DNA of 63,885 nt, counting the filler, from Octopus bimaculoides (taxonomy: Eukaryota), in NCBI RefSeq assembly GCF_001194135.2. It is 7 parts of 6 records of this genome, joined end to end, with 100 filler letters (N's around TTAATTAATTAA, not from the genome) between each part and the next. Parts side by side here need not be neighbours in the genome. Positions count along the whole stretch, not along the records: positions 1 to 13,701 come from NC_068997.1; 6 more parts are not named here. One strand, 5' to 3'. Positions 792 through 63,885 of the stretch are shown here, one piece after another (positions within the stretch are counted from its first letter, which is position 1; each line of letters starts with the position of its first letter). A program made the translations under genes and the position numbers. The notes under the pieces are model-generated. The model saw only the letters and a program-made list of their open reading frames with translations. It did not search any database and was not told the DNA's origin.

Positions 792-1247
792 ATTTTTGTA
801 TGTAATATAATTTTAATCTTCGGATTTTTTTAATATGCTAGACCACTGGTTTTAATTGATTAATATCAATTTCTACCCTCATTAATAACTTATATATATA
901 CGTATATATATATATATATATNNNNNNNNNNNNNNNNNNNNNNNNNNNNNNNNNNNNNNNNNNNNNNNNNNNNNNNNNNNNNNNNNNNNNNNNNNNNNNN
1001 NNNNNNNNNNNNNNNNNNNNNNNNNNNNNNNNNNNNNNNNNNNNNNNNNNNNNNNNNNNNNNNNNNNNNNNNNNNNNNNNNNNNNNNNNNNNNNNNNNNN
1101 NNNNNNNNNNNNNNNNNNNNNNNNNNNNNNNNNNNNNNNNNNNNNNNNNNNNNNNNNNNNNNNNNNNNNNNNNNNNNNNNNNNNNNNNNNNNNNNNNNNN
1201 NNNNNNNNNNNNNNNNNNNNNNNNNNNNNNNNNNNNATAATATATAC

Positions 1248-5076: not shown

Positions 5077-5718
5077 CCAATGTAAATATATATGAAGTGT
5101 GTGTGTGTGTTTGTGTGTGTATGAAAAACAAGAATATAAAGGATGCTAAATAATGTCAAATGAGTAAAAGTGTAAAATAAGTTAAATTGATGTTGCTGTG
5201 TTGTGCTCTATGGATAGAAATCCATGATTTGCCTACAATATTACTAGTTGTTTAATGGAGTGAACGGTGAAAGCAAGTTTGGTTGTAGTAAACAACAATA
5301 ACAGCAGCAGCAAGGATAATGTTAAATAAATTATAAAATTGGTTTCGTAGTTTTCAAAAGTATTCGATGATACTGTCAAAATGATTTTTTTTCTTCTTTA
5401 AATGAGAAACTTTGGAAATGTGCTTGACAATGATTTTGTATACATCTTTCGTGCATCCGTCCAAAATTCTTTTGAATTAATTGAAATATCATGTCTGATG
5501 ATGACATTTTCGATTAAAAATTGATTACTAATTATTTTCACAACACTCAGATTACAAATGATATTCTTTACCATTTCCATAAGAAATGTCGTACAAAATT
5601 TTGATTATAAACACGTACACATCACATTATTACCACCGGCAATATCCTCAAATTTCAGCGACAAAATAGCTGTACACGAATATATTGTGTGTCATGGAAC
5701 GAGCGATCAGGTTCATTT

Positions 5719-5963
5719 CTATTGATAAAACAGTTTGACAGATCCAGCTTGATCGGCGTCACCGAAATTACAATACATTTTACTTGCTGTATAGGGCATA
5801 TAAGTACCGGCATCCATCGTAGTGGCTTTAACAAACACTTGGCCGTCATTATTGAAGATAAAAGTAACAAAATTCAACACATATCTTGGATAGTTTCTGA
5901 AATATGTCAAACGTCGACTCATGGATACTTCTATCATTTTTTCAGATTCCATAACATCGTAAT
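5719..5963 (-). CDS. VirK-like domain protein, terminal exon (DYDVMESEKMIEVSMSRRLTYFRNYPRYVLNFVTFIFNNDGQVFVKATTMDAGTYMPYTASKMYCNFGDADQAGSVKLFYQ*)
   Basis: Pyrimidine-rich TTACAG acceptor at 5964, 245-nt open frame to TAG at 5719-5721, phase-1 join with the 7507 donor. The F..F.F..DG.V...ATT and C.FG motifs fit the VirK (PF06903) pattern as I recall it. Confidence 0.8.
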
Positions 5964-6164
5964 CTGTAACGATACAAAAAGAAAACAAGATGTGTTACAA
6001 AAGCTACCCTAAATATTTTCAGATCAGATTTTAATTGTTCTGAGACTGCATTTTAAATCTGAGCACAATTTTATCAAAGTCTACAACAATGTTCAGATAA
6101 TTCCATCTGTATCAAAGTACAAGCGTTAACTTGTTTTGTCCATTCGTTTTGTCTTTGTTTGCAG

Positions 6165-6187
6165 GTGTGTGTGTGTGTGTGTGCGTG

Positions 6188-6240
<53 letters not shown>
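6165..6240. repeat. (GT)n/(GTGC)n alternating purine-pyrimidine microsatellite in the VirK-like intron
   Basis: Direct reading of the sequence. Confidence 0.95.
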
Positions 6241-7201
6241 GGCGGAACGCCCGTGGGAATTTATTCTATATTTTGTCACCACAAAATAATCGTAACTAAA
6301 ACTCAGTTATGGAACCGTACTTTATCTATTTTTTTTAGTAATGAAGACAATCATAAACCTCAAACTACAAACATTTATTCTTGGACCTTTGAAGTCTAAC
6401 CCCAAACTTTATTTGGATTAAGGAGATAATTTTAAATTACAAAGCCAGCGAGGAACAGGCCACTGCTTTAATAGATATACATGCAGCATAATAGTTAAAT
6501 CTCATATACCTGTTAAAGTAGATAAAGAAGCTGATATCTCAAGATTGAAAGAGCGTCATGCTGTATATAAAGCAGTATTTAGTTAGATGCCATTATATTC
6601 TGAGTTCAAATCAAGGTCTCCAGATGCTTATCATACAAGAGCTGTAGGAACAGCGAATATGAGCCGGGGTATATATGAATTCTTGAGACTGTAATCTAGC
6701 CTACGTGAAAGGAGTGATGGGAATGGATTTGATAATGGAAGTTGCTCCTTCATTATTGTTTCTAATTTATGCACAAGGCCAGCATTTTAAGAGGGAGGGT
6801 GAGTTGTCGATAGCATCGATTCCAGTACTTGAACAGTATTTTATTTTTTATTGATCTCGAAAAGAAGAAATGCAAAGTTGATCTCGGCGGCATTTAAGCA
6901 CAGATAAAAAATCGGAGCAAATATATATATTCGATATTTGCTACTAGTAAATCTAATTTCCTTTTGCACGTACTCCTTTTTATATGCATCAGTAACGACA
7001 TTCTCACTGGCAATGCCTTCTCTGTATATTCCACAAATGTAATTCTTTTTTTCCCAAATAAATTGCACTTCATATTAAACGCTTCGATGAAGCTGTGGGG
7101 TGCCATTCACACACTCAACCACGAGTCCACTGCATTTTATAGAAGAAACAGCTGTAAGTTAATGAAGTCAATAACATAACCATTGCTTTTCCTCTGTTAT
7201 C

Positions 7202-7249
<48 letters not shown>

Positions 7250-7506
7250 ACACACACACATATATATATTGACTTTCCAAGTTCTACAAATTCGAAATAA
7301 CCTACAACGGAATAGTCTCCACAACACCTACATTAGTAACATTCATGTAAGAGGTCTCCAGTTCACGTACTTACATTACACATATGTGTCATATATATTT
7401 TACATGTTAAAGGAATTCATATTACATGCTTTTTTTCGAAAAATGACTTTAGATAGTAAGAATGGTGTCAAATGTTTTAGAGAATCGTAAGTATCAAATC
7501 TTTTAC

Positions 7507-7676
7507 CTGTGATTTCACCGCCAGAGATGGCTTTTGTTCGGGCTCCAGCGCAGGTTGTATAATCAACTGACATACGTACAAGACGACCCTTCCTCAACAG
7601 TGATAGCAACGACGTAAACCTTTTGATTGGCATGACATCTTTGTGAGGTTCGGTGATGAATTTTAAATTGCCATCC
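7507..7676 (-). CDS. VirK-like domain protein, internal exon (xDGNLKFITEPHKDVMPIKRFTSLLSLLRKGRLVRMSVDYTTCAGARTKAISGGEIT)
   Basis: CTCTACAG acceptor at 7677, CAG|GTAAAA donor at 7506, 170 nt (phase 2 to phase 1), stop-free. F..L...L..G..VR..VD...C and GG motifs fit the VirK N-terminal half. Confidence 0.8.
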
Positions 7677-7954
7677 CTGTAGAGTTAATTGCAAGATTTA
7701 GTAAAAGAACATTTATATATATACACATATAGCAAAATAATTGAGATTCAGATGAATTAGGTACTTAAGTTGAAGCATCAAAGGTTAGTGCAGTTTTATC
7801 CGTAAGACATCAAGTTCACGTACATACATTCCCCTATGTATCAACATTCTCCCATTACAACAACTCAATTTGGCAATTCTCTTGCATCAAAAATAGAGTT
7901 TATTCTCAGCAGTTTCTATAGAATTTAAAAGTTGTCGAGATGCTTGAAAAAGTT

Positions 7955-8837
7955 CTAATCGGTAGGCGAGAGGTCTGGTGAGTATGGCGGTCGAAGTAGA
8001 GTTTCGTAGCCCAATTTGTTCAACTTCAGCAGGGTCAGTTGTGCGACGTGCGGCCGAGCATTGTCGTGGAGAAGAATTGGTCCTTTTCTATTGACCATTG
8101 CTGGCTGTTGTTGTCGGAGTTTCTTATGCATTTCATCCATTTGCTGACAGTACTTCTCCGTCGTAATGGTTTCGCCTGGATCCAAAAAACTGTGATGGAT
8201 GNNNNNNNNNNTGAGCTGATCGTCGCCGGTTGTAAAGAATCCACTTTTCATCGCAAGTCACAATCCGGTCAAGAAACGGATCGTTCTTCTTGCATAAAAG
8301 AAGGGAAGACAACACTTCAAAACGGGTTCTTTTTTGTTTTTTTTTTTCAATTCGTGCTGCACCCATTTCTCAAGTATTTTTGTTTTTCCACTCTCTTTCA
8401 AGTGGTCGGTAAACATCCGATGGCCGACCGCTACGCTTATCATCTTCAAGACTCTCGTCACCGCTACGAAATTTCTTGAACCATCTTTGTGCTGTAAGTT
8501 CATTAGTGGTTCCTGGGCCAAACGCATCGTTGATATTGCAAGCTGTTTCAGCAGCTTTTCGGCCTAGCTTGAACTGGAATAAGAAAATTGTGCGAATTTG
8601 CTTTTTGTCCCTGTTGTATTCAACGTTCCGGAAAAAAATGGCCTAATTATTCAAAAAGAAAAAGAGTAACACCTTTAGATAGAGCGAAAAACGGGCTTCA
8701 AAATGATATATAAAGTCAAAGTAATTTAACGGAAATTAATTTGAAAATACATAATTTAAAACGGAAATTAATTTGAAAATACATAATTTAAAACGGAAAT
8801 TAAAAAATTTCGCAAGAACTTTCTCGAGAACCTAATA
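7955..8837 (-). mobile_element. Decayed mariner transposon
   Basis: Frameshifted transposase motifs DRIVTCDEKWILYN, HDNARPH and PPYSPDLSPTD; TIR-like TATTAGGTTCTCGAGAAAAGTTCTTGCG at 8837-8811; 32-bp internal tandem at about 8723-8803. Confidence 0.92.
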
Positions 8838-9289
8838 ATTGAATGTAAAGTGGAGTTATCCGTTTTAGATCGTTCCAGCTACATTTTAAACATATCAGAG
8901 TATAATCGATTACTTTTCCTTATTCGACAAACGGTGAATTTCATGTTTCCAACATGAATTTCTTCTGATGAAGGCACCGGTTAAACGTCTTTTTAGAATT
9001 TAAGGTCTCCAGATCAGGTGAGTTTTTCAGGGTTCTTGTTCTCTCAGCCAAGCAATGCTTACATCATTTTCCCCGTTGAGGTATAACTCCAGTTGTTCCA
9101 GGAGCCTCCGTTTAATTATGTGTAGTGTACCTTTCTCATTTAAATGGCATACGTAGCTAGCCAAGTACGTGATGTAGTATTCTAAAAAGTATTCTAAAAA
9201 GTATTCTAAAAAGGAACCTGTGATTTTTAAAACGATGCTTGAATGGATACCCTGTAAATTCAGCATATTTTCGTTTGTGCCCTTGTTCT

Positions 9290-9600
9290 GGTGGTGTTAC
9301 AGTTGCTATTGTTGCTGTCGTTATCGCTGACGTTGCTTTTGTTACAGCAAGATCCGTTGTTGCTGCTGCTGCTGCTGCTGCTGGTATTGCTGTTATTGTT
9401 GGACGCGATGCTGGTGCCATAGTTGCCGTCATCATAGCCACTGTTGCTACTACTGATGGACGCATTGTTGTTGCTGCTTTAGCTGTCGCTATTGCCATCG
9501 TAGGTGGCGCTACTTCTCAGTGCGCTGCTGGTATTGCCACCGCCGCTGCTGCAATTGTTGCTGCTATCGCTATTACCGGACACTACCTCAGCGTCGTAGA
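9290..9600. repeat. GC-rich (GCT/GTT/GCC) low-complexity tract giving Ala/Thr/Val-rich spurious ORFs
   Basis: Degenerate triplet repeats; ORFs on both strands have no recognisable domain. Confidence 0.55.
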
Positions 9601-10620
9601 CCATTCCTTCAGAGGAAATTCTTGGTGGAATCATGAAATTCCACGTTTGCCGGAAAAGCAATCGACTATATGCTGACCCGTTTTAGACGCAACTGGAACA
9701 ACCGATCTACATTTATTTCCAGTAGAATTTCGTTTTGGAATGTTTTCTTTAAGGCCTTAACCTACTACGACGCATTCCTTCCGCCTCTTGTTCAGAATTT
9801 ATATACCTTTGGCCAACGAGTCTGACGAATCACGTATACAGCTAAGAGCTTTATAGATACGAAACCAATGGTCACTCTTTAACCGGCCGTAACAAACAAC
9901 GTTGTCATTCTCTCTCTCTCTCTCTCTCTCTCNNNNNNNNNNTATACACACAGAGAGAGAGAGAGAGAAAGGGGGAGAGAGAGTGCTCTATGTATGTAAT
10001 TATTCACTCGCCTTCTCATTGTGTTGTCAAGCATTAACATGAGTATCTAAATACCACGCTGGTGAGCCCGCTTTGCCGCGAGTTTATCCTTCACCAAAAG
10101 ATATAAAGAAAGGATGACATCAAGTAACCAAAATCTCTCTTACAACTGAGAGAAAGCAAATTAACAATGCATGCTACAGATGCTGGTTGTGTGCAAATGT
10201 TAGACTAGGAAACGACATGAAATCAGGCTCACATGTCCCATATAAGTGTCACTGATAGATATACTGGTCGACCGTAATAATATGTAACTTGCTGACTGTC
10301 GTCGGTTTCAATCTAAAGCATTACAGTAGAATACATGGAATAGATGTGGTGTGTAGAAACCTCGCCAATGTTCATCTAGTGTGAGTCAGTTGGATCTTAG
10401 ATCCAGTTTGGTGGTCCTCGGTCTTGATTCTGGTAGCTAGAGTTAAATCAAGCAAGGGATTACAGCGATATTGTACACACTCAATATGAGTATAAAAGAC
10501 GAAAAGTTTTTATTAAATGTATTTAATTTAAAAGAAATAACCATAACCACAAGACCATGAGCCTACAAGTTCAAGTTTTAATTGAAGGGAATCAACAGTT
10601 TTGGGTTGCGTAGATCTCAC

Positions 10621-10679
10621 CCTGGCGGCATATATATTGAGATAGTTGCAAGGCTGCATACACTGCCTTTCATTCTCAT
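10621..10679 (-). CDS. Candidate first coding exon of the VirK-like gene (MRMKGSVCSLATISIYMPPG)
   Basis: CAGG|GTGAGA donor, phase 2 matches the 7676 acceptor, in-frame ATG. One of three competing candidates. Confidence 0.25.
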
Positions 10680-12773
10680 GCAATGTATGAAGCAACAAAG
10701 TTAGTTTACATAATATAGAAGAGTAGAGACGGCTTACAAGAATCTGATCTCCGACTAACATAACTGAAGGTTAACTCTATGCTTACAAAAAATAAATTCA
10801 CAGGAAAGCAAGTCAGTATAATGAATATTTGTAAAACAACAGAAAATAGTTGTATTAAATAGAAGATAACAAATCGAAGAAAAAGATCCTATGGTCTTCA
10901 AACGAAACCTAAATAAATTTCTTCAAGAGATACCAGATTAGCCACCTATACCCGGATACATCTCAGCCAACAACTTACTACTTGAATGGGCCATAATACC
11001 ACAAAATTTGACTTTAAAATGACTTAACAGATCCTCTCAGGTGGTGCTATTAAGCTAGACATGGTCTGGGACAATCTTTGGCCGAAACACATCTAAGTTA
11101 TCTAACACATTGATTAGAGTTGCACGAGCAATGTTAAAGGCCAGTAAAGCATAGTGCTAAATGTGACAGTTGTAAAACTGAAACTGTAAAGCTATTTGAT
11201 GGTGATGGTTTAATACATGTCTAAGAGTGTATCCAACATTTTTATGTGGTATCCGCACGATATCTATAACAGACAATTGGATGAGAATTTTTGTTAATAT
11301 TCTGGGTACCTTTAAGGAGAAAATTAGTTCTGAGGTCTATCGTGATGTGCCTCACAGCAAAACAATATGAATGTTGGTTAGGGCAAATAAAAGCTTTTAA
11401 AATATGGATGTATTGCAGAAATATAAAAAAGACTTCCGAATTTAATTGTCTTTTTCAATAGAGTTTATATAAAAATACCAGATTTGTTCATTCCAGTCTT
11501 AGCAGCAATGTAAGTCAATTAAGGATGCTGGGATAACAAAATCAAAGTAAAAATGCAAAAACAAAAGTTGTTTAGGGCTACAATTGTTGTCATTGAGAAG
11601 GGGTTGACACTAACGCTTGTGTTGAGTAACTAAGTTCAGCTCGTACGAAAATGTTTGTGGGGGATTAGAACTAAATCTGTTTTTATTGGAGCGAATTAGT
11701 AGTAACAACTTGCATTATGCTATCTTGTTACAAAGCCACATCTTTTATTGGAATAATGCTTTGGCGAAGAATACATACTGCAAAATCTCCATGTTACTTC
11801 AGTAACATACATGACTCGCATTTTAAATCTTCATTTTTAAGAGGAAATATACTAGAAACTGAAGTTATTCAAGGAAGAGAACATAAACTTGAGTAAACAT
11901 TTTATTATTAATTGTGAATTCTACAACTAACAAGATACTTAATTCGTTGAAATGTGTTTGAATTAATGCCATAGAAACAGAAATGTTTGTAATGATGCTG
12001 CATAAAATGTGACAAGAATGATTATACATTACAGTTACAAAGAAGAGGCATTGAACTTATTAACTCCAACTTTAAACGGAAGAGGTTATTAACCTTCAGC
12101 AGAAAAGTTTCCCTTTCAACTAATTGTCATAGTGTGTGATGAGCATTCATGAAAAACAAAAATCAAAAAAGTACCACTTCCATTAAGGCCTGCAGAGGTA
12201 GTATGATTGAAGAGATATCGATTTTGCTAATCACTAACTTGAATCTTATTAGCATTTTGCGCTTGGAAACACATCAAAAGTACAGGTTGGCTAAAATTAA
12301 TTCTGATTTAGCTCTTTTCTCTGTTATGATTTCTCTAAATTAATTCAGCTCTTCTTGCCATAAAAATAACACCCTCGATCTCATCAACAACATTTTATAG
12401 TTGAAACATGCCAATCTAGACAAGTTCCAATAAAAGGCAATCTGGAATCATAAAACTTTTATACTGATGGATCAGATCTCAGAGAAGCCAATGATTTCCA
12501 GTTTGCGTATAATTCAATCATGTTCAGCTCACTTAGCACAAAATCCCAAAACTGCTGTTATTACTGAAGTAAATCATCTTAAATCTGCTGCATTTCGAAG
12601 CTACTTGACCATTAAATACCAGAGGAAACAGTCTGTTACACGCGCGCGCGCGCATTGACATAAATATACCCACACCTAAGTATGTGTATATACTTGTATA
12701 TAGATGTGTATATACACATGCATATATACACTTATATACATACATATAAGTGGTATACATACACACACATACA

Positions 12774-12815
<42 letters not shown>

Positions 12816-13151
12816 GTAGAGTCTCTCTAACGAAATCGTAATCTACTTTGCACAATAAGCATCACTCTAAATCAAGATGGAAAGCTATTTATATGAAATA
12901 GTAAAACATTCGTGATAGAGTAGACATAACTGAAATTTAATTCAATTTAACAACTCAAGTAGAATCATTTTGAATTTGTAAAAATTGTTTCCTGAACTTG
13001 AGAAAAACAGTAAATTTCCTACAAGAAAAAATTTTTAAATGTTTTCTTTTTCGTGTATATTCTCCGAAACTTAATCAATACTATAATATTCTTTGGTCGA
13101 CCCACTGATTTTGTTAAACCGCTATTCCCTGCCATATCTATCTATCTGTCG

Positions 13152-13183
<32 letters not shown>

Positions 13184-13189
13184 ATATTA

Positions 13190-13400
13190 CTTGTTTCAGT
13201 CATTAGACTGCAGGCATGCTGGGACACCGACTCGACGTATTTTGGTCGAATGAATCGTCCCCAGTACATTTTAAACCTGGTCCTCATTCTATTGATCTCT
13301 TTTGCCTAACTGCTAAATTACTGGGACGTAACACTGCAACACCGGTTGTCAAGCGATGGAAGAAGACAAACACAGACACACACACATACACACACACACA
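13190..13400 (-). mobile_element. SINE copy (second octopod-type family)
   Basis: TTTCAGTCATTAGACTGCAGGCATGCTGG...GGTTGTCAAGCG, similar to copies near 27970-28370, 31325, 54370, 55005 and 59170. Confidence 0.7.
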
Positions 13401-13423
13401 CATACATACATACAATATGTATG

Positions 13424-13464
<41 letters not shown>

Positions 13465-13745
13465 CGGAGATGTACTTGCATAGCAAGTGACCTGATCTGA
13501 GATTGTGTGTTGAAACAAAAACAGTTGCAGCGTGGAAGGTGTTTATAAACCATTTAAAAACACACAAACACCGTTAGATTCACTTCAACATTTAAATTTA
13601 ATTTTTCAAAATATTTCCGTCGCTTTGAAACCGCGACCTGTACCCTGACAAAATTCCGTGCTGCATCTCTGTGATGCGGCACGGAATATTCTTTCAAAGT
13701 TNNNNNNNNNNNNNNNNNNNNNNNNNNNNNNNNNNNNNNNNNNNN

Positions 13746-49094: not shown

Positions 49095-52000
49095 AACACA
49101 AAAGTACATATGCGTAGACTTTTACAAGTGAGTAAATGCATATATGTAGGTGTTTGTTTGTATATATATATACATATATATATATTCATACATGCACATA
49201 TCTGTTAATGGATAAATAGTTGCGTGAGTGTGTATATACATGTATGATTACATTTTATGTGTAAAGGGAAAATACTGGAATTAATTTTAAAATTCTTAAT
49301 TAGTCCAAATATTAATTATTTCTTAAGGAAATGAGAACCTCAGTCTGTTTAAGCATGATATACGTTCTAAAGAATACACACAGAGGTGATAATAAGCAGA
49401 TATCTAAGAATACATAAAATTATAAACATGAATTTGCATAATCAAGAATTAATTTTCTATCAAATATCTTCTAAATATAAAGTTGTGTTGACTAAAAATA
49501 ACTGATGTCTAATTGCTTGCAATACGTATTAACACATAAAAGAAAAGAAAGTTTGTTTCATAATATTGTGAATATTTTAGAAATATTTAATCAAAATGCA
49601 GTAATAATAATAATTGTAAATATATATTTTTTTATTCTAAGTTCATTTTATGAAACGTCTTCATTGTCTAAAGTGGTGTATGTGTATTTAACACTAAATT
49701 TCTAAAATGCTTAGGCGCATTAAATTGATTATTTATAAATTCATACAAGGGGAAATATAATCACGACTCTTCTTGACGTGACGCGTTTTAGAATATCAAA
49801 ATGAGCTTTGTCATCACCGAGTGAGTTCAAAATATAAAATATTATGAGATGAATTTCAGTCGCCATTTAAATTAGTATTATCTCTTAAAGTCATTTGAAT
49901 CATTTTCATATTAATATAACGAAAGCTCTTGGTTACTTTGCCGCAATGAATACAGTACTGTCATCCTTAGTAAAAGTATGATCTGATCTTGTCGGTGCTT
50001 ATGTTTTGGATATTATGTTCCAATGAGGTTATCCCGAAAATGCTTTATCGAGTAGCAAAGTATAATAAATCTATTTTAGAAAATTCAATATAAATAGTTG
50101 TACATTACTTGACATAGGCAATCAAATGCAAATTAACCAACAGAGCATAAATTTATTGATACAAAAATAAGGAGTTTCATACGTAGATACGTTTCATAAT
50201 ATGAAAATGTCATCTGCGCAAACATTATTATCATCCATATTCACTGCGGAACTGGCGTCGATTATTATTGAGTATTGGTACCAGATTGAAATGAGACTCA
50301 ATAAATATGAAACATGATCACGTCGATGTTTGTCAGCTTTAAAATTTATGTAACATAGGTAGTAGGCTGACGCATTGAATGATTGACATTTTTTTAGCTG
50401 AAGGGTTTTGCGGAAAACTCATTTCGAATAAGGGCTCTTTTCGAGAGAGAGAGAGAACTCATTTCGAGAGAGGACAGGAACAAGATCAACAAATTCATAT
50501 GGTACATGGTAACTGTTTGTTTCTAGTAACATCTTAGCATTAGATAGTAAAATTACTTCAAAATTTTTGATCGTATTATTTTTCCTTGAGTGTTTTATTA
50601 ACCTCAATGTACAGAAAATAAACACGTTTTATTCGATCGACTTTTCTCATAGGCGATCGATATACACTATATGTAATTCCGGTGCATGATACAATTTATT
50701 TGAGTCAACTAAACAGTGAAGCCTGTAGGTAGTAATTCAAAAAGCTAAACATGGGAAATATATTTTCTAAAATCAAATACGGTCATATTAAGAAAAGGAT
50801 ATATTAGATAATATGACCACAGTCGTCAAATAAAACATAATCCGGCGCCACTGGCCACAGTCTAAACTACCTGTTAGATTTGGTGGTCTTGATCTCCGTT
50901 CTGGATTGAACATGGCTGTGTCAGGCAATCTTTCCTCGCTCTCCTTCAGCAAGATACTTCATGGGATGGCGAACCAGATATGGCCCACGAACTGGAATCA
51001 GGCTTAGCTGATTGAATCGCTGAAGGCCTTGCCGTTCCCCAGAATGCGGATGTCCAACGTAACCGGGATTTTAACAGGCGCAAGTTCATCTTCGAGCGGT
51101 TAGGCACATCATTAGATGAACAACATCTTGCCTGCCGCCGCCCCGATTTGCAGCCAAAGGGCGTCGATTGGCTCAATTCGATGCCCTTCTCATCTACTGG
51201 TACTTTCTAGATGATGACTGCCCTCGTATTGGAATAGCCCTACACTGTAGCCCCGCATACGTGAGCCTCACAAATGTTGTGGAGCAGTAGAAAATGAATT
51301 CGGCCTGCATCTCTTATCCTGCACCATTAGCGCGGTCCGATCCCCCTAACACGTTGTTCTTAATATCATAAGTAGAAGGGGTCTAGACGTGGCTAGCTTC
51401 CCAACTGAACTGCAACCGATAGGTTCCTGGCGGAATAATCCTCTTCCCATTCGAAGGAGGCACACACTAAGTCTAGGATGCGACAAGGAACAGCAGGTTC
51501 TCCAGCTCCAGCCTTGCTGCATCGGCTGCATACCCGGTGGTCGCCGCCCATTAGGCGGAAGAGAGAAAAACCAATAATTACAGGAGTCTGACAGGCCGCT
51601 ATAAGTTTGTATCGGTCACCGTCGAGAAGTCAGATTTTGTGTGACCCCCATACTACTGATTTCCTCCGCAGAGTCGATATGACGGCAGCCGGTAAGAGAA
51701 ATGAGTCCGGAGATGGGGTGGTTGATGAAACGAGTATCGCTAGTCATCATCTGCGGCAATGCCATCGCGCTTATTACTGCGGGGCGCAGATGAGCAACCA
51801 TTCGTTCCGAGGGGGTGTGACACATTACCCCTCTCCTCTATCTGCTGTTGTTGTATTATTTTTCGTTCTTTTTCTCTTTTCTCTTTTTTTATGTTTCTTT
51901 ACATTTAAATGTTATAATTTAAAATGTTATCTGGTGTATAATTGACTGCAGAAAAAACAAAAAAAAAATCAAAACAATGTCTTTGTTCTTTAATTCAAAC

Positions 52001-54122: not shown

Positions 54123-55004
54123 NNNNNNNNNNNNNNNNNNNNNNNNNNNNNNNNNNNNNNNNNNNNTTAATTAATTAANNNNNNNNNNNNNNNNNNNNNN
54201 NNNNNNNNNNNNNNNNNNNNNNAGGGGAGAGATGGGTGGTAGGAGGGAGGGTGGGGGAGAGAGAGAGGAGGAGGGGGTTAGATGAAGAGTGGAGGGGAGT
54301 TGGTCTTGGAGGGGTAGGGTGGTGGGATGGTAGGTGAGGGGAAAAGGGGTGTATTTATGTGTGTGTGTTTGTCCCACCCACCATTGCTTGACAACCGATG
54401 TAGGTATGTTTAAGTCTCTGTAACTTAGTGGTTCAGCTGAACAGACCTAGAGAATAAGTCCCGGGGTCGATTTCTTCAACTAAAAGGTGATGCTCCGGCA
54501 TGGCCACAGTCAAATGGCTAAAACAAGCAAAAGGAAACAATAAAAGAATAGTTCCAAGATTTTGATGATGTGATTATTATTTTACGAATGACATCATAGG
54601 GTAAGCGTGAGAAGTCAGATCACGCCAGTTTGACCATAAAACAGGTAGAATGTGATGTGGTCAGATATGGATGGATACAGTCAGTTTAGATGCTAGCGGG
54701 TAAAGAGAGATTTGACTGCTGTCTCTAGCCGCTTCAGTGGTAAGAAAGAGGCTCCGTCATTGGCTGTGAAGTATTCTTTTTCTATACGGTATGATGCAGT
54801 CATCGTAAGTTTTGAGACGCTAAAAATTAGTCAACATAAAGTACTGAGATCCTTTGAGTGTAAGTATAGCTACTTATACTTCTAATGCAATTTCTTAAGT
54901 ACGCCAGGACAAACAGAATAAAGTGGGAAGCTTCGACTGAGGACCGAAATTGGGTCACAGAGTTTTCTACAGAGCTCGCCTAATAAACAACCAAACTGTA
55001 GTAC

Positions 55005-55390
55005 AGACGGGGATATGTGGTTAAGAAGCTCACTTTGCAGCCATGTGGTCTTGGGTTCAGTCCTACTGCACGGCACCTTGGGCAAGTGTCTTCGACTATA
55101 GCCCTGGGCTGTCCAATGACTTGTGAATAAATTTGGTAGACAGAAACTATGTGGAAGTCCACTGTGCACGTGTGGGGGGGGTCCCCTCTTGTCAAGCTGT
55201 GGGTAGAGGGGACCCACAGCTTGACAATCAGTCTTGGGTTTGTTTACATCCCCATGACTGAGCAGTTTCGCAAAAGAGACCAATAGAATAAATATCAGCT
55301 TTAGAAAATAGTACTAGGGATCAATTTATTCAACTAAGCCTTTCAAGGCGATGCCCCAACATGGCCACAATCTAATGACAGAAACAAGTA
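55005..55390 (+). mobile_element. SINE, near full length
   Basis: GTGGTTAAGAAGCTCACTTTGC...GGTTCAGTCC...CACCTTGGGCAAGTGTCTT head and CATGGCCACAATCTAATGACAGAAACAAGTAAAA tail. Confidence 0.85.
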
Positions 55391-58984: not shown

Positions 58985-59345
58985 CATTGAACGGTTATAC
59001 TCTCAGCTATGGCTGGAATTCATTCGCTGTCAAGTAGACTGGAGAAATGTGAAATGAACACGTGTTACCTCATACTGAAATTGAAACCACAGTCATATGC
59101 TCTTGAATGCAGCACACTAACCACTGGCCAAGTACCTTCACGCACGCATGCACACAAGTACGTGCTTTATCGTTTATTTGTTTTAGTCATTAAACTGTGG
59201 AATTTTAATGAATGAATCGACCCCAGTACTTCTTTATTAAGCCTGGTACTTTATTCTATCAGTTCTCTTTTGCTGAGCTGCTAAGTTACAAGGATGTAAA
59301 CACACCAACACCAGTTGTCAAGCAGCAGTAGGGGACAAACCCAGA
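58985..59345 (-). mobile_element. Two adjacent SINE fragments
   Basis: tRNA-like head (reverse complement) near 59070-59130 and family body at 59170-59345. Confidence 0.65.
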
Positions 59346-59415: not shown

Positions 59416-61367
59416 CAACATACATACATAGTGGTTGTCTACTCCTTGTGCAGAGTTTGACCACCTCCTCTACTTACACCTCAGAACCATCGTGGCATCT
59501 GATGTGGTTTTTTAAAACTAGACAATGTTTTGAAAAGACACCCACATAGATTGCATATGCAATTTGGACCACCAAGNNNNNNNNNNNNNNNNNNNNNNNN
59601 NNNNNNNNNNNNNNNNNNNNTTAATTAATTAANNNNNNNNNNNNNNNNNNNNNNNNNNNNNNNNNNNNNNNNNNNNTATTTATAAGTCTTGGTCGAGCCT
59701 ACTTCTTCGCTTGGGGGCGTCGACACAACAGATTCAAAACTACGCTTCTTACTATTATTTCGTTTTATGCTTACCTACAATAGCCACANNNNNNNNNNCT
59801 ACGCTTCTTACTATTATTTCGTTTTATGCTTACCTACAATAGCCACATGACTTTACTGGTCACGCAACCTGTTAGAAATAGCAACCAATTCCCTCCCAAA
59901 GTGTGATGAATGCTAAAGCACTTCTACCAGCTCAAATGTATTTTTATCGACTTTCATTNNNNNNNNNNATGCTAAAGCACTTCTACCAGCTCAAATGTAT
60001 TTTTATCGACTTTCATTTCCAGATCATGGCTGGTCACTTATTTAGACAAAACCCAAACATGTATATGATAACAATTTTCATTCAATATTTTATTTTTCAT
60101 ATTTCCCTATATTTTAATTTTTAGATGAAAGCTTGAAATTTCGATTTAAATAAGAAACTGCCAGTGTTTTCTCTTTGTAGCTACATGTTAATTTTAATAA
60201 ATACCCTAAAATATCTGACAAATATAATAGTTTGTATAACGTGTCTTTTATGTGAACTAAATCAGCCAAATCTGAATTTTATCCCAACAGAAATGTTATG
60301 GTTTATTTTTTAAAACTTCTGTCCGTTGTGTCAATGCTCATCCATTTCAGAGTCATCACACCTCTGTTCTCAATAAAAGTTTGCTGAAATTGGATCCCAT
60401 TTTGTCACAGAAGAGGCAACTATGGAGTGCAAGAATGTTATGTTAGTAACTTTAGCTCTTTCTTGTAACACTGCATTCAGATCTGCAGAAATGTTCCGCG
60501 ACACAAACGACTCTCACTGAATCATGCAAAGAGTGAAAGAAGTAAGTATTTCATTCTGTCTCTGGTGTGAATGGGGTTTTCTGGAGGTTGCTTCTGTGAA
60601 TTGAAAGATTCTGATATACTTTCAAAACAACCGTATATGATTAATGCTCTAAAACGGAGTCAAAAGGTTTTGAATTTTTGTAGTGTTCATACTTTCAGAC
60701 AAAACAATTCTTAGAAATTACGTGAACAGTTATTCTTTCAATATTTCTCAAAGTCAATCCATTATATTTCCCCATTTTCATGTGAAATTATGTCGTTCTG
60801 AGAGGATGACTTATTTATGAATGCATGATACTCCTTGAGGTTTGTGACTCTCCTCAGTTACATCATCATCATCATCATCATCATTTTCTCTGGTATTATT
60901 CTTTGATTGATTTGACCAATTATGGTAAATATATTTTGTCGTTAATTAAAATATGCCAATTACTGTCACAATCTTTAAGCAAAACATGATGAAGATCTCA
61001 CTCACCAAAGGAATTGATTTGAGTCGTCACAGTTGAAAGTTATACATTATAGTTTTATAGAATCTGTAAAAGATTTATATTTTCTCAGGTTTTCACACTT
61101 GGCCCTTCTAGAAATAAATTTACTGCAACAAATTAAATTCGATACTAACTATGTTTCTCTTAGTATTCATAAAAAGTAACTTGTTTTATAGAACTTTCAG
61201 GAAGAAAGATCATGTTTATATTTTTCTTGTGTTTTTACATCACAGAAAATGTTTGAATATAATTTCGCTTCCAGTTTTTGGAACTAAAAATCAGTCAGAT
61301 ATTATTTGAAATATTTTTATACATTTATACAGAATTTAACACCAAATAATTTGTTTTCATACCAATA

Positions 61368-61625
61368 TGTACCCTGCGAGTAAGCGAAAGCAAAATAGTG
61401 TGGTCAATCGTCGTGGTTTGTTTGTCTGTGTGTTAGAAGCAATAACTGGGAAGCAGCTGAACAGATTTTCACCGAGTTTGGCAGAAATACTCAGTGGGTA
61501 ACTGACTAAAACTGAATAAAATTTGGTTTGATTATCTGCAAAACTGACGGATGTGTGAATCAAAATGTTTTGACTGTGCAAATGTTTTGCGAAAGAAATT
61601 ATGAACGCAGGTTATGGATCGTTGT
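61368..61625 (+). mobile_element. DINE-1/HINE-like (Helentron-associated) element
   Basis: TACCCTGCGAGTAAGCG start, (GTTT/GTCT) microsatellite core, then AATAACTGG...CAGATTTTCACCGAGTTTGG. Confidence 0.45.
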
Positions 61626-63885
61626 GTCATGTTCTCAGCACAAGAAGCTATTAGCAGCACATAAAAACAGGTATTATGTCTACTAAATACTATTTATCAC
61701 TCACCAGATGGGACACGGAACAGTATACAATATATATATGTGTCTGCGTATGCGTGTGTGCGTGTGTGTATGTATGTATGTATGTATGNNNNNNNNNNGT
61801 GTGTGTGTGTGTGTGTGTGTATGATTTGAATCGACCTTGTCTTCATGTGTACAGATCATGGTGTATCTAAATACATAGACACGTGTAGGTACATACATAC
61901 ATAAATACATACATAGATATGCGACTCTGTGTGTGTGTGTNNNNNNNNNNNNNNNNNNNNNNNNNNNNNNNNNTGTTCAGTGATGGATTCGAGAGTTTCG
62001 TTTATTTATGAGTTGATTTCTTATTTTCACCGGAGTATAGATACTTATAATGGTGATACTTAAAAACAAATTTCCCGATAAGCATGTAGCCATATTATTT
62101 ATATCCTGCAGTTGACTACAGTACGTTGAATTCGCCTGCCTTCATTGAAAAACGTTGAAAACACTTCTCAAATTCTATGCAATAGTTTCTATACTTATTT
62201 CATTTTGTTCACTTTCCTTTTCACAACCGTGATTTTTATTTGAATAACCANNNNNNNNNNATTTTGTTCACTTTCCTTTTCACAACCGTGATTTTTATTT
62301 GAATAACCATTTACTTAGTCATTTGCAAATTTTACTTTTATGGTTTGGCATAGACATCGATCAAATCCACTTTTAGCCGCCATCTTCTTAGTCTTCTAAA
62401 TCTCTTTTAGGCAAACAATTACAAAGCTTAAGTTAGTTCAATTAAAAAAGTATGTCTGCGCAACGCATTGTAAGCCACACTATAATTTGAGAAAACCTTT
62501 ATCTGCGCGCAGGGTATGCATCACCCCTGAAATGCCTTTTTTCTTTTCCCTTTCAATAGCAATTTCTAATAAAATATCCGAAATAAATTTGAGACAATTT
62601 AAATAGTTTAGTATTTAATTTCAGAACAACCAGGTTTGTCANNNNNNNNNNGACAATTTAAATAGTTTAGTATTTAATTTCAGAACAACCAGGTTTGTCA
62701 ACTCCTATCATAAAAGAATCCTACAACCAGTGGATAATGGCTATGAGTCTTACAATCTTGTTTCANNNNNNNNNNAATCCTACAACCAGTGGATAATGGC
62801 TATGAGTCTTACAATCTTGTTTCATTAAATTATGTATGGTAGAGCTTTCTGTCACATCCCATAATTTTATAGACAAAGGAAGTNNNNNNNNNNTATGGTA
62901 GAGCTTTCTGTCACATCCCATAATTTTATAGACAAAGGAAGTCCTTCAAGGAAGGTTCATGGTGTTTTACTTATTTAAAATGTTTTCTACGTCTATGGTG
63001 CAAAAAGTCTTGAAATCAAAATGAAAATTAAGATGCGATAACAACCGAGTAGTATGAAGTTAAATATTGTCAGGCAAAATAGTACTTTTCCATTATCTGT
63101 GATTATTTGAAGTTATTCCGATACTGTGGAGTCAGTGTGTCTTTTCCTCAATCACATGGAATTGGTGTAACAAATGCCGTGAATTTGGTAGCTAGTAAAT
63201 AACGAGCATCTTAAAGCTAGGATATAAAACAAAATGATTCTAAATTGTACTCTCACAACCCTACGAATTTTTATACAAGCATCCCCACTTTAAACCGGCC
63301 TTAAACCATAACAGAACAAAGAGAGATATCCTTAGATAAATAATATATCATATAGAAATACTATCTCTATGTGATATATATCAAGAGAAAAAACATCAAT
63401 GTATGCATACCAGACATTTTATTCTAAGCTATAAATGAAGGGAGATAACTCTAAATTTGGCAGAAGATATTAAAACTGTTTAAATAACAATGGACGTGTT
63501 TAGGAAGGGGATTAGATATACAACAACAACAACAACAACAAACGAACTTTGAAAGTTTATCTTTATTTCAAAAGTTAATTTCTAACAAAGGAGCCAAACC
63601 AGTGAAGCGTATCTCTTATGTGGGAGATAGATCTGCTAGAATTAGTAGCTAAATCCACTGCACTCTACACCTCATTATTGTAAAGAAGGACACATAGGAG
63701 AATGNNNNNNNNNNTTATGGGTTCTCTATACTTTGATCAAAGGTATCTCTTTGGTCAGCATTCACCTGGGAGTAAACAACAGCAACATTTACACAGAAAT
63801 TCACCGTTCCTTTAATGAGAGATATCCAAGTGCAGCAAAGCACTCAGCATCTTGCAAAGCTTTTATGAGTGTCTCAAACGTACGT

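What the first reader, a model, noticed from the sequence alone, without database searches (positions are those of the whole stretch)
5719..7676. Intron-containing animal gene encoding a bacterial VirK-like domain
Seen: two canonical exons splice in frame across a 1.5-kb microsatellite-rich intron into a 138-aa stop-free C-terminal peptide. Knowledge, from recall: VirK (Pfam PF06903) is a small exported protein of unknown function in Agrobacterium Ti plasmids, Xanthomonas and Legionella. It is unrelated to enteric VirK/YbjX. The motif order here (F..L...L..GR.V...VD...C, GG.I, I..S....T, F..F.F..DG.V...ATT, C.FG, G.V..F) follows that family end to end. Inference: a domesticated, probably horizontally acquired or patchily retained gene with no described function in cephalopods. 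This is the best candidate for an undescribed system in the window.
Basis: partly seen in the sequence, partly recalled or inferred. Interest (0 to 1): 0.85.

Follow-up and report, generated by a model that had tools for sequence, protein, structure and literature searches.

The report
Octopus gene tail encoding VirK fold
These are the last two coding exons of a conserved octopus gene for a secreted protein made of a CpcT-like barrel and two bacterial-type VirK domains; it occurs across molluscs, is catalogued as "uncharacterized", and its function is unknown.

Summary
On the minus strand, exon 7676-7507 and exon 5963-5719 splice across a 1543-bp intron with two microsatellites. They read 137 codons plus one split codon, ending at a TAG.

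The window is 100% identical to Octopus bimaculoides chromosome CM046617.1. The peptide equals XP_014781777.1 (LOC106877395, 123 aa) and is 98% identical to the C-terminus of O. sinensis LOC115220992 (521 aa).

A cuttlefish mRNA and its genomic contig confirm the orthologous exon borders. Both introns keep position and phase in Argonauta, a mussel and a snail. pN/pS against Argonauta is about 0.04.

The VirK call is right:
- Pfam PF06903 covers the whole profile. The fragment scores 19.8 bits, below the cut-off; the full protein scores 34.8 bits, above it.
- The AlphaFold model has one PDB match, the Legionella VirK protein 5XTA (TM 0.75/0.85).

This is not a small stand-alone gene. It is the second of two VirK domains behind a signal peptide and a CpeT/CpcT-like barrel. 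The family spans cephalopods, bivalves and gastropods, so any transfer from bacteria predates their split; transfer itself is untested. One exon is missing from the gapped assembly, and that exon's absence probably explains why the gene is annotated as two models. No paper describes the family.

The parts
7507..7676 (-). Penultimate coding exon (170 nt). It encodes the last base of an Arg codon, residues D1-T56 of the peptide (helix, first strands and Cys42 of the VirK-2 domain) and the first base of Asp57. The old 123-aa gene model starts at the internal Met at 7633-7631.
   Evidence: sequence, frame. (conservation ends at both splice sites). (cuttlefish mRNA against genomic contig gives the same 170-nt exon). 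(same intron positions and phases in Argonauta, Mytilus, Batillaria). (XP_014781777.1).
5964..7506 (-). Last intron, 1543 bp, phase 1, GT...AG. It contains two microsatellites: (GTGC)19 at 6165-6239 and (AC)27 at 7206-7260.
   Evidence: It cannot be aligned to the 554-bp Argonauta intron.
5719..5963 (-). Last coding exon segment (245 nt). It encodes residues D57-Q137 (the beta-sheet body of VirK-2, including Cys121 at 5772-5770) and the stop TAG at 5721-5719.
   Evidence: 96% identity to O. sinensis residues 439-521. (contiguous with the previous exon in cuttlefish mRNA).
5251..5718 (-). Start of the 3' untranslated region; its extent is not determined. The first poly(A)-signal-like hexamer, ATTAAA, is at 5256-5251, 462 nt after the stop. 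No AATAAA occurs within 2.7 kb.
   Evidence: This is inference only; there is no transcript from this species.
7677..13701 (-). 3' part of the preceding intron (phase 2), at least 6 kb. It holds no further coding exon of this gene. It carries a decayed mariner element and two 10-N assembly gaps.
   Evidence: tblastn of the orthologues finds only the two exons. Mariner. Gaps.

Best explanation
Window 5719-7676 (minus strand) holds the last two coding exons of the Octopus bimaculoides orthologue of LOC115220992. That gene spans about 53 kb.

Shown: the full protein, about 520 aa in sister species, has these parts in order:
- an N-terminal hydrophobic signal sequence ending ...ALA;
- a CpeT/CpcT-like (DUF1001) beta-barrel;
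- a disordered, very basic linker;
- two homologous VirK-fold domains.
The 137 residues encoded here are the whole second VirK domain: one helix packed against a long, curved antiparallel sheet, with the two cysteines conserved in the bacterial family. The gene is transcribed and spliced in cephalopods, is under strong purifying selection, and has kept its intron positions across three mollusc classes.

Inferred, about 0.3 confidence:
- The protein is secreted.
- Cys42 and Cys121 form a disulfide in each VirK domain.
- The protein is a non-enzymatic extracellular binding or carrier protein. The lipocalin-like CpcT barrel would hold a hydrophobic or tetrapyrrole-type ligand, and the VirK tandem would supply a second binding or docking surface.
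- The basic linker has R-x-[KR]-R motifs in several species. A furin-type convertase may cut there and separate the barrel from the VirK pair.

The two separate O. bimaculoides gene models (389 aa and 123 aa) are most likely an artefact. One exon (residues 339-384) is missing from the gapped assembly.

The confidence given (0.85) is for the identity and anatomy shown above, not for the inferred function.
For: Exons, frame and splice sites.
Source: 100% DNA identity to O. bimaculoides CM046617.1.
Peptide identities: identical to XP_014781777.1; 98% and 93% to the O. sinensis and Argonauta full-length proteins.
Splicing: uninterrupted 522-aa ORF on four RNA-type Logan contigs; the mRNA matches genomic DNA only across the 170-nt exon.
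Selection: pN 0.030 against pS 0.78.
Intron position and phase conserved in Argonauta, Mytilus coruscus and Batillaria.
VirK assignment:
- PF06903 covers profile positions 3-98 of 98, E=8e-4.
- Whole proteins score 26-35 bits against a cut-off of 23.7.
- AF2 model has pLDDT 82 and pTM 0.76.
- Foldseek gives a unique hit, 5xta_A, with E=3e-7, TM 0.75/0.85 and rmsd 1.9 A; the next hit has E=0.027.
- Both Cys align with those of 5XTA.
Two homologous VirK domains: hhalign probability 96%, E=3e-9.
CpcT barrel: PF06206 at 42-72 bits; Foldseek 4o4s/4o4o E about 7e-7.
Signal-like N-termini in all full-length members.
Bacterial VirK proteins are themselves Sec-exported and secreted: PMC4768671, PMC6617341.
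Against: - The window fragment alone is below Pfam's gathering score (19.8 against 23.7 bits).
- Sequence identity to 5XTA is only about 15%, and the domain profile reaches it at only E=0.054.
- There is no transcript or protein evidence from O. bimaculoides itself.
- The exon for residues 339-384 is absent from the whole 69.5-kb locus, so a truly broken gene in this species is not excluded.
- Secretion, the disulfide, linker cleavage and ligand binding are not tested.
- No VirK protein has a known biochemical activity, so the functional part rests on fold analogy.
Confidence: 0.85

Rival explanations
1. Origin, option A: ancient horizontal transfer. A bacterial gene or genes for secreted VirK and CpcT-like proteins entered an ancestor of molluscs, or an earlier animal. 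They then gained introns, duplicated the VirK unit and became fixed.
For: - Both Pfam families are described as bacterial or cyanobacterial, and the solved relatives are bacterial.
- A single-sequence search of 1.84 billion representatives found named relatives only in molluscs.
- Bacterial VirK proteins are small secreted proteins. Such a protein could work in a eukaryotic secretory pathway.
Against: - No phylogeny was made.
- No bacterial sequence is close enough to be found by phmmer, and no donor-like fusion was found.
- A eukaryote-looking contig (L010, 53% GC, long non-coding flanks) also carries a 2xVirK protein. It has no bacterial or archaeal close relative. VirK may therefore be more widespread in eukaryotes than thought.
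- The search used only the C-terminal domain.
Confidence: 0.4
2. Origin, option B: vertical descent of an old eukaryotic or animal gene that was lost in most lineages (patchy retention).
For: - Conserved intron positions and phases across three classes indicate great age.
- CpcT-like domains are known in other eukaryotes, such as plant CRL (10.1101/2021.04.25.441383).
- A 2xVirK protein sits on a eukaryote-like contig.
Against: No non-mollusc animal member was detected. Sensitivity was limited and the full-length profile search was swamped by close relatives.
Confidence: 0.3
3. A stand-alone small gene, as in the old annotation: LOC106877395 would encode a 123-aa protein starting at Met 7633, unrelated to the upstream model LOC106877392.
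For: XP_014781777.1 exists with exactly this sequence.
Against: - The reading frame is open and conserved upstream of that Met, right up to the acceptor at 7676.
- In O. sinensis, O. vulgaris, Argonauta and cuttlefish the same exons are the 3' end of 504-531-aa proteins and mRNAs.
- The 123-aa product would lack a signal peptide and the first strand of the domain.
Confidence: 0.04
4. A decaying gene in this species: the exon for residues 339-384 is really lost, and the two terminal exons are relics.
For: That exon is not found anywhere in the 69.5-kb locus. RefSeq's N-terminal model ends in a different, low-complexity exon at window 9604-9479.
Against: - Four N-gaps, including runs of 291 and 1065 N, lie between exon 4 and the 170-nt exon. 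The first gap starts 285 bp after exon 4. In Argonauta the missing exon sits 674 bp after exon 4.
- The two terminal exons are intact and differ from O. sinensis at only 3 of 137 residues.
Confidence: 0.07
5. Bacterial contamination, or a recent cephalopod-specific transfer.
For: Only the bacterial flavour of the domain.
Against: - Spliceosomal introns are present, and the DNA is AT-rich and microsatellite-rich with a mariner remnant.
- The sequence sits in a 57-Mb chromosome.
- Orthologues with identical intron phases occur in bivalves and a gastropod.
Confidence: 0.01

Closest known systems
VirK family, Pfam PF06903. Members include Legionella pneumophila Lpg1832/NttG (PDB 5XTA), Xanthomonas citri XAC0435 and Agrobacterium VirK.
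   Same: - Same fold: TM 0.85 on 5XTA, rmsd 1.9-2.0 A.
- Profile match over the full domain length.
- Same two cysteine positions.
- Exported behind an N-terminal signal sequence: bacterial members, mollusc proteins.
- Function unknown in both.
   Different: - The host is an animal, and the gene has spliceosomal introns.
- The domain is duplicated in tandem and fused behind a CpcT-like barrel in a roughly 520-aa protein, rather than being a single-domain protein of about 120-145 aa.
- Only about 15% identity.
- Each single domain scores about 20 bits, below Pfam's 23.7-bit cut-off.
- There is no type II secretion context.
CpcT/CpeT T-type phycobiliprotein lyases, Pfam PF06206 / DUF1001 (PDB 4O4O, 4O4S). 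This concerns the N-terminal domain of the same protein, outside the window.
   Same: - Pfam match well above the cut-off: 42-72 bits against 21.
- Barrel fold match: E about 7e-7, TM 0.68 on the target.
   Different: - The mollusc protein is secreted, and molluscs have no phycobiliproteins to serve as substrate.
- It is fused to VirK domains.
- Lyase residues and bilin binding were not examined.
- About 18% identity.
Plant CRUMPLED LEAF (CRL) and rice SSG7, which are eukaryotic proteins carrying a CpcT/DUF1001-like domain.
   Same: They show that this 'cyanobacterial' barrel has been reused in eukaryotes for non-lyase roles (papers listed).
   Different: They are plastid outer-envelope proteins of plants with no VirK domain. 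There is no evidence of direct orthology; this was not tested.
Enteric VirK / YbjX (DUF535) of Shigella and E. coli.
   Same: Only the name.
   Different: No Pfam hit to that family in any scan.

Membership tests
VirK (Pfam PF06903) | The window-encoded fragment alone scores at or above Pfam's gathering cut-off (23.7 bits). | tested here: not met
   19.8 bits, E=8e-4, although the alignment covers profile positions 3-98 of 98. The O. sinensis equivalent gives 20.3 bits.
VirK (Pfam PF06903) | The whole protein scores at or above the gathering cut-off. | tested here: met
   Scores: O. sinensis 34.8 bits, Argonauta 31.2, cuttlefish 26.2-28.2, Sinanodonta 31.9, Mytilus 40.9. Each has two matched stretches. 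Mactra (20.6) and Batillaria (15.4) fall below.
VirK (Pfam PF06903) | Three-dimensional fold of the solved family member (5XTA). | tested here: met
   The AF2 model (pLDDT 82.4) hits 5xta_A with E=3.1e-7, probability 1.00, TM 0.75/0.85, rmsd 1.9 A over 123 columns. It is the only hit with E<1e-3. The full-length model repeats this. The model is a prediction, not an experimental structure.
VirK (Pfam PF06903) | The conserved pair of cysteines (...C after strand 1; ...C-x-[FLI]-G near the C-terminus). | tested here: met
   Cys42 and Cys121 of the peptide align with the two Cys of 5XTA and with the pair in VirK-1. That they form a disulfide is inferred, not measured.
VirK (Pfam PF06903) | Export behind an N-terminal signal sequence. 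| tested here: inconclusive
   All full-length mollusc members start with a basic and then hydrophobic stretch ending A-x-A or similar; the maximum 12-residue hydropathy is 2.2-2.75. No dedicated signal-peptide predictor or experiment was used. That exon lies outside the window.
VirK (Pfam PF06903) | Usual make-up: a single-domain protein of about 120-145 aa in Proteobacteria. | tested here: not met
   Here the domain sits in a roughly 520-aa, three-domain, intron-containing animal gene. This is a difference of architecture and host, not of domain homology.
CpeT/CpcT (Pfam PF06206) | HMM score above the gathering cut-off, and the CpcT barrel fold. | tested here: met
   41.5-72.2 bits against a cut-off of 21. 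Foldseek 4o4s_A E=6.8e-7. This concerns the N-terminal domain of the same gene, which is not in the window.
CpeT/CpcT (Pfam PF06206) | Bilin binding and lyase activity. | not testable with these tools
   Needs biochemistry. The catalytic and bilin-contact residues were not compared.
Enteric VirK/YbjX (DUF535) | Match to that family's profile. | tested here: not met
   No such hit even at E<=1-10 in the Pfam scans.

The most novel reading that the evidence does not exclude
A module from bacterial secretomes (a CpcT-like calyx plus VirK) was captured by an early mollusc more than 500 million years ago. It has since been kept as an extracellular carrier for a tetrapyrrole/bilin-type or lipid ligand, for example in pigment handling, mucus or shell and skin secretions. 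The animal protein would then be the first tractable handle on what the VirK fold does, which is also unknown for the bacterial secreted VirK proteins.
Probability: 0.12. Interest if true: 0.7.

Novelty: new variant of a known kind. Interest (0 to 1): 0.42.

Why it matters
VirK is a widespread family of secreted bacterial proteins, found in Agrobacterium, Xanthomonas and Legionella. One structure has been solved, but no biochemical function is known.

This work finds the same fold, duplicated and fused to a lipocalin-like CpcT barrel, in a strongly conserved secreted protein of cephalopods, bivalves and gastropods. That has three consequences:
- It gives an independent system, free of any pathogen context, in which to ask what the fold binds.
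- It is a candidate case of very old domain sharing between bacteria and animals.
- It corrects a split gene annotation in the O. bimaculoides reference.

The find is modest. The gene is already in RefSeq and UniProt as "uncharacterized", with both Pfam domains detectable. Nothing here reveals a mechanism.

Tried and rejected
- More exons in the window: tblastn of six orthologues and a sensitive search for residues 339-384 found none in 7677-13701 or elsewhere in the window. A 'GFVSI' match at about 9866 has no acceptor and no further similarity, so it is chance.
- NCBIfam scan of the peptide: only a spurious 11.5-bit hit.
- Word-indexed homologue searches with the peptide, with P0002 and with a family alignment returned only close cephalopod proteins. 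The family's breadth comes from the single exhaustive phmmer run.
- The phmmer hits P0006, P0008 and P0009 are long repeat proteins that match only the strand segment at residues 69-127. They have no VirK Pfam context and were set aside as compositional.
- A bacterial fusion or donor: the family alignment had no stretch conserved enough to scan. Scanning 185,579 bacterial and archaeal genomes with the 2xVirK protein P0014 found nothing.
- Viral structures (BFVD): no match with E<0.03.
- Rfam and tRNA scans of the window: nothing.
- Literature searches for PF06903, DUF1001, 'chromophore lyase CpcT', VirK + mollusc, LOC115220992 and NttG found no description of an animal VirK or CpcT protein and no function for VirK. 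The paper on the 5XTA structure is not held.
- The ParE_toxin hit on the low-complexity ORF 9157-9498 scores 18.5 bits, below its cut-off, and was rejected.

Full report
**What is in the sequence.**
On the minus strand, a 170-nt exon (7676-7507) has the acceptor ctctacag|G and the donor ATCACAG|gtaaaag. A 245-nt terminal coding segment (5963-5719) has the acceptor tcgttacag|ATTACG and the stop TAG at 5721-5719. Joined, they give one leading base, 137 sense codons and the stop. The upstream intron is phase 2, completing an Arg codon. The last intron is phase 1, inside an Asp codon. The 1543-bp intron contains (GTGC)19 at 6165-6239 and (AC)27 at 7206-7260.

**Source and existing annotation.**
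- The reverse complement of the window is 100% identical to Octopus bimaculoides assembly GCA_001194135.2, chromosome CM046617.1.
- Residues 15-137 of the peptide are identical to XP_014781777.1, 'uncharacterized protein LOC106877395', 123 aa. That old model starts at the internal Met at 7633.
- The peptide is 98% identical to the C-terminus of O. sinensis LOC115220992 isoform X2 (XP_036366343.1, 521 aa). It is 93% identical to the Argonauta hians orthologue and 77% identical to two further cephalopod proteins, one of them cuttlefish-type.
- In all of these, the two exons end a protein of 504-531 aa.

**Is it a real, spliced, selected gene?**
- The 522-aa cuttlefish-type protein P0018 clusters with Acanthosepion pharaonis proteins. 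It is encoded as one uninterrupted ORF on four independent Logan contigs, one of which ends in a poly(A) run, so these are mRNAs.
- A genomic contig of the same or a very close species (L001) matches that mRNA at 99.4%, but only over 170 nt. The match is bounded by ...ttttcag| and |gtacg.
- The same mRNA aligns to the window's two exons back to back.
- Window against L001: similarity begins at the acceptor and ends at the donor.
- Against Argonauta, 67 of 79 differences are at third codon positions. pN is 0.030 and pS is 0.78, which is saturated. The introns do not align.
- Exact splice mapping in Argonauta (L005), Mytilus coruscus (L012) and Batillaria attramentaria (L013) shows the same last intron, phase 1 in the Asp codon after GG-x-x-x. 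It also shows the same penultimate intron (phase 2) and the same intron before that (phase 1).
- The exon structure therefore predates the split of cephalopods, bivalves and gastropods.

**What the peptide is.**
- Pfam gives a single hit, VirK (PF06903), at E=8e-4 and 19.8 bits. It covers profile positions 3-98 of 98 but is below the 23.7-bit cut-off.
- Whole orthologues pass the cut-off at 26-41 bits with two matched stretches. Each single domain scores about 20 bits.
- An AlphaFold2 model of the 137 residues has pLDDT 82.4 and pTM 0.76. It has exactly one significant match in the PDB: 5XTA, Lpg1832/NttG, the VirK-family protein of Legionella. The scores are E=3.1e-7, TM 0.75/0.85 and rmsd 1.9 A. 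The next hit has E=0.027.
- Profile-to-sequence searches also put 5XTA first, at E=8e-4 with the family profile and 0.054 with the domain profile. Both cysteines align.
- No viral structure matches.
- No match to the enteric VirK/YbjX family appears in any scan.

**The whole protein.**
- Full-length members carry a hydrophobic N-terminus of signal-peptide type.
- Next is a CpeT/CpcT (PF06206, DUF1001) domain at 42-72 bits.
- Next is a disordered basic linker.
- Last are two VirK domains, homologous to each other (hhalign probability 96%, E=3e-9).
- The full-length model (pLDDT 74.9) hits the bilin lyase CpcT (4O4S/4O4O, E about 7e-7) and 5XTA (E=1.4e-5) and nothing else convincingly.
- The window holds only VirK-2. 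No other exon of the gene lies in 7677-13701.

**Distribution and origin.**
- One exhaustive phmmer run with the C-terminal domain found 13 hits at E<=1e-3. The named ones were all molluscs: Argonauta, Sinanodonta/Potamilus, Mytilus, Mactra and Batillaria.
- Another unnamed genomic contig (L014) has the same exon layout and is closest to Mactra.
- A 296-aa protein with a signal sequence and two VirK domains (P0014) lies on a 53%-GC contig with long non-coding flanks, so it looks eukaryotic. It has no close relative in 185,579 bacterial and archaeal genomes.
- No bacterial sequence is near enough to be found by sequence search.
- A recent transfer or contamination is therefore excluded.
- The choice between an ancient transfer and vertical descent with losses remains open. 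It needs domain phylogenies that I could not build here.

**Function.**
- Bacterial VirK proteins are Sec-exported. They are found in the culture supernatant fraction or secretomes of Legionella and Xanthomonas, and their activity is unknown (PMC6617341; PMC4768671; PMC7325957).
- I found no paper on an animal VirK or CpcT-like protein.
- My best mechanistic guess, about 0.3 confidence, rests on folds and architecture only. It is a secreted, disulfide-stabilised binding or carrier protein whose CpcT-like calyx holds a hydrophobic or tetrapyrrole-type ligand. It may be split at the basic linker, which has RGRR in octopus isoforms, RSKR in unionids and RNKR/RSKR in Batillaria.

**Annotation problem noticed.**
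- In the O. bimaculoides chromosome the gene runs for about 53 kb. Exon 1 is at L015 10001-10534 and exon 4 at 49329-49628. The two window exons are at 61336-61505 and 63049-63293.
- The exon for residues 339-384 is found nowhere in the locus.
- Four N-runs lie between exon 4 and the 170-nt exon. One, of 291 N, starts 285 bp after exon 4. Another, of 1065 N, abuts the window's edge.
- RefSeq's current N-terminal model (XP_052830077.1, LOC106877392, 389 aa) instead ends in a low-complexity exon at window 9604-9479.
- The simplest reading is a gap-induced split of one gene. A real lesion in this species is a minor alternative.

**Verdict.**
- I class it as a new variant of a known kind, of moderate interest.

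Noticed in passing
window 7955-8527 (minus strand): A decayed mariner-type transposon lies in the intron upstream of the 170-nt exon. Transposase pieces sit in three different frames: 7955-8251 hits Pfam Transposase_1 (PF01359) at E=4e-9, and 8133-8366 reads '...DPFLDRIVTCDEKWILY...'. A 10-N assembly gap at 8202-8211 interrupts it.
   Followed up: partly
window 9479-9604 (minus strand); L015 59408-59533: This stretch is the terminal exon of the current RefSeq model XP_052830077.1 (LOC106877392), with the tail 'MVYDAEVVSGNSDSS...NSDS*'. It lies inside a GC-rich low-complexity region (9157-9676) that is open on both strands. No orthologue has this tail, so it is probably a mis-modelled or cryptic terminal exon.
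   Followed up: partly
L015 49629-61335 (O. bimaculoides CM046617.1), upstream of the window: The exon for residues 339-384 of the orthologues (GFVSIIKEV...CQLYDVIQR) is missing from the assembled locus. Four N-gaps lie in this interval, at 49913-50203, 54246-55310, 59070-59079 and 60801-60810. The gene is annotated as two separate models.
   Followed up: yes
window 922-1236, 8202-8211, 9933-9942: Runs of N, which are assembly gaps. The 10-N gap at 9933-9942 is flanked by (GA)n/(TC)n. The 315-N gap is followed by (AT)81 at 1240-1402.
   Followed up: no
window 8728-8803: A perfect 32-bp tandem repeat (2.4 copies, 100% match) just upstream of the mariner remnant. Its nature is unknown.
   Followed up: no
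window 12133-12302, 12907-13067 and 13228-13393 (coordinates on the reverse complement): Inverted or dispersed repeat copies of about 166-172 bp, 88-92% identical to each other, near the low-coordinate end of the window (roughly 310-1570 in window coordinates). They may be a short interspersed element or a foldback repeat flanking the 315-N gap.
   Followed up: no
orthologous proteins, linker between the CpcT-like and VirK-1 domains (outside the window): The linker is disordered (pLDDT<50 at residues 223-262 of P0016), strongly basic and alternatively spliced (isoforms X1-X3). It carries R-x-[KR]-R motifs in octopus, unionid and Batillaria proteins, which may be proprotein-convertase sites.
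   Followed up: no
L010 544-1434 (Logan SRR24908310): A 296-aa protein with a signal sequence and two VirK domains sits on a 53%-GC contig with long non-coding flanks, so it looks eukaryotic and non-mollusc. It has no close relative in bacterial or archaeal genomes. VirK may occur in other eukaryotes.
   Followed up: partly
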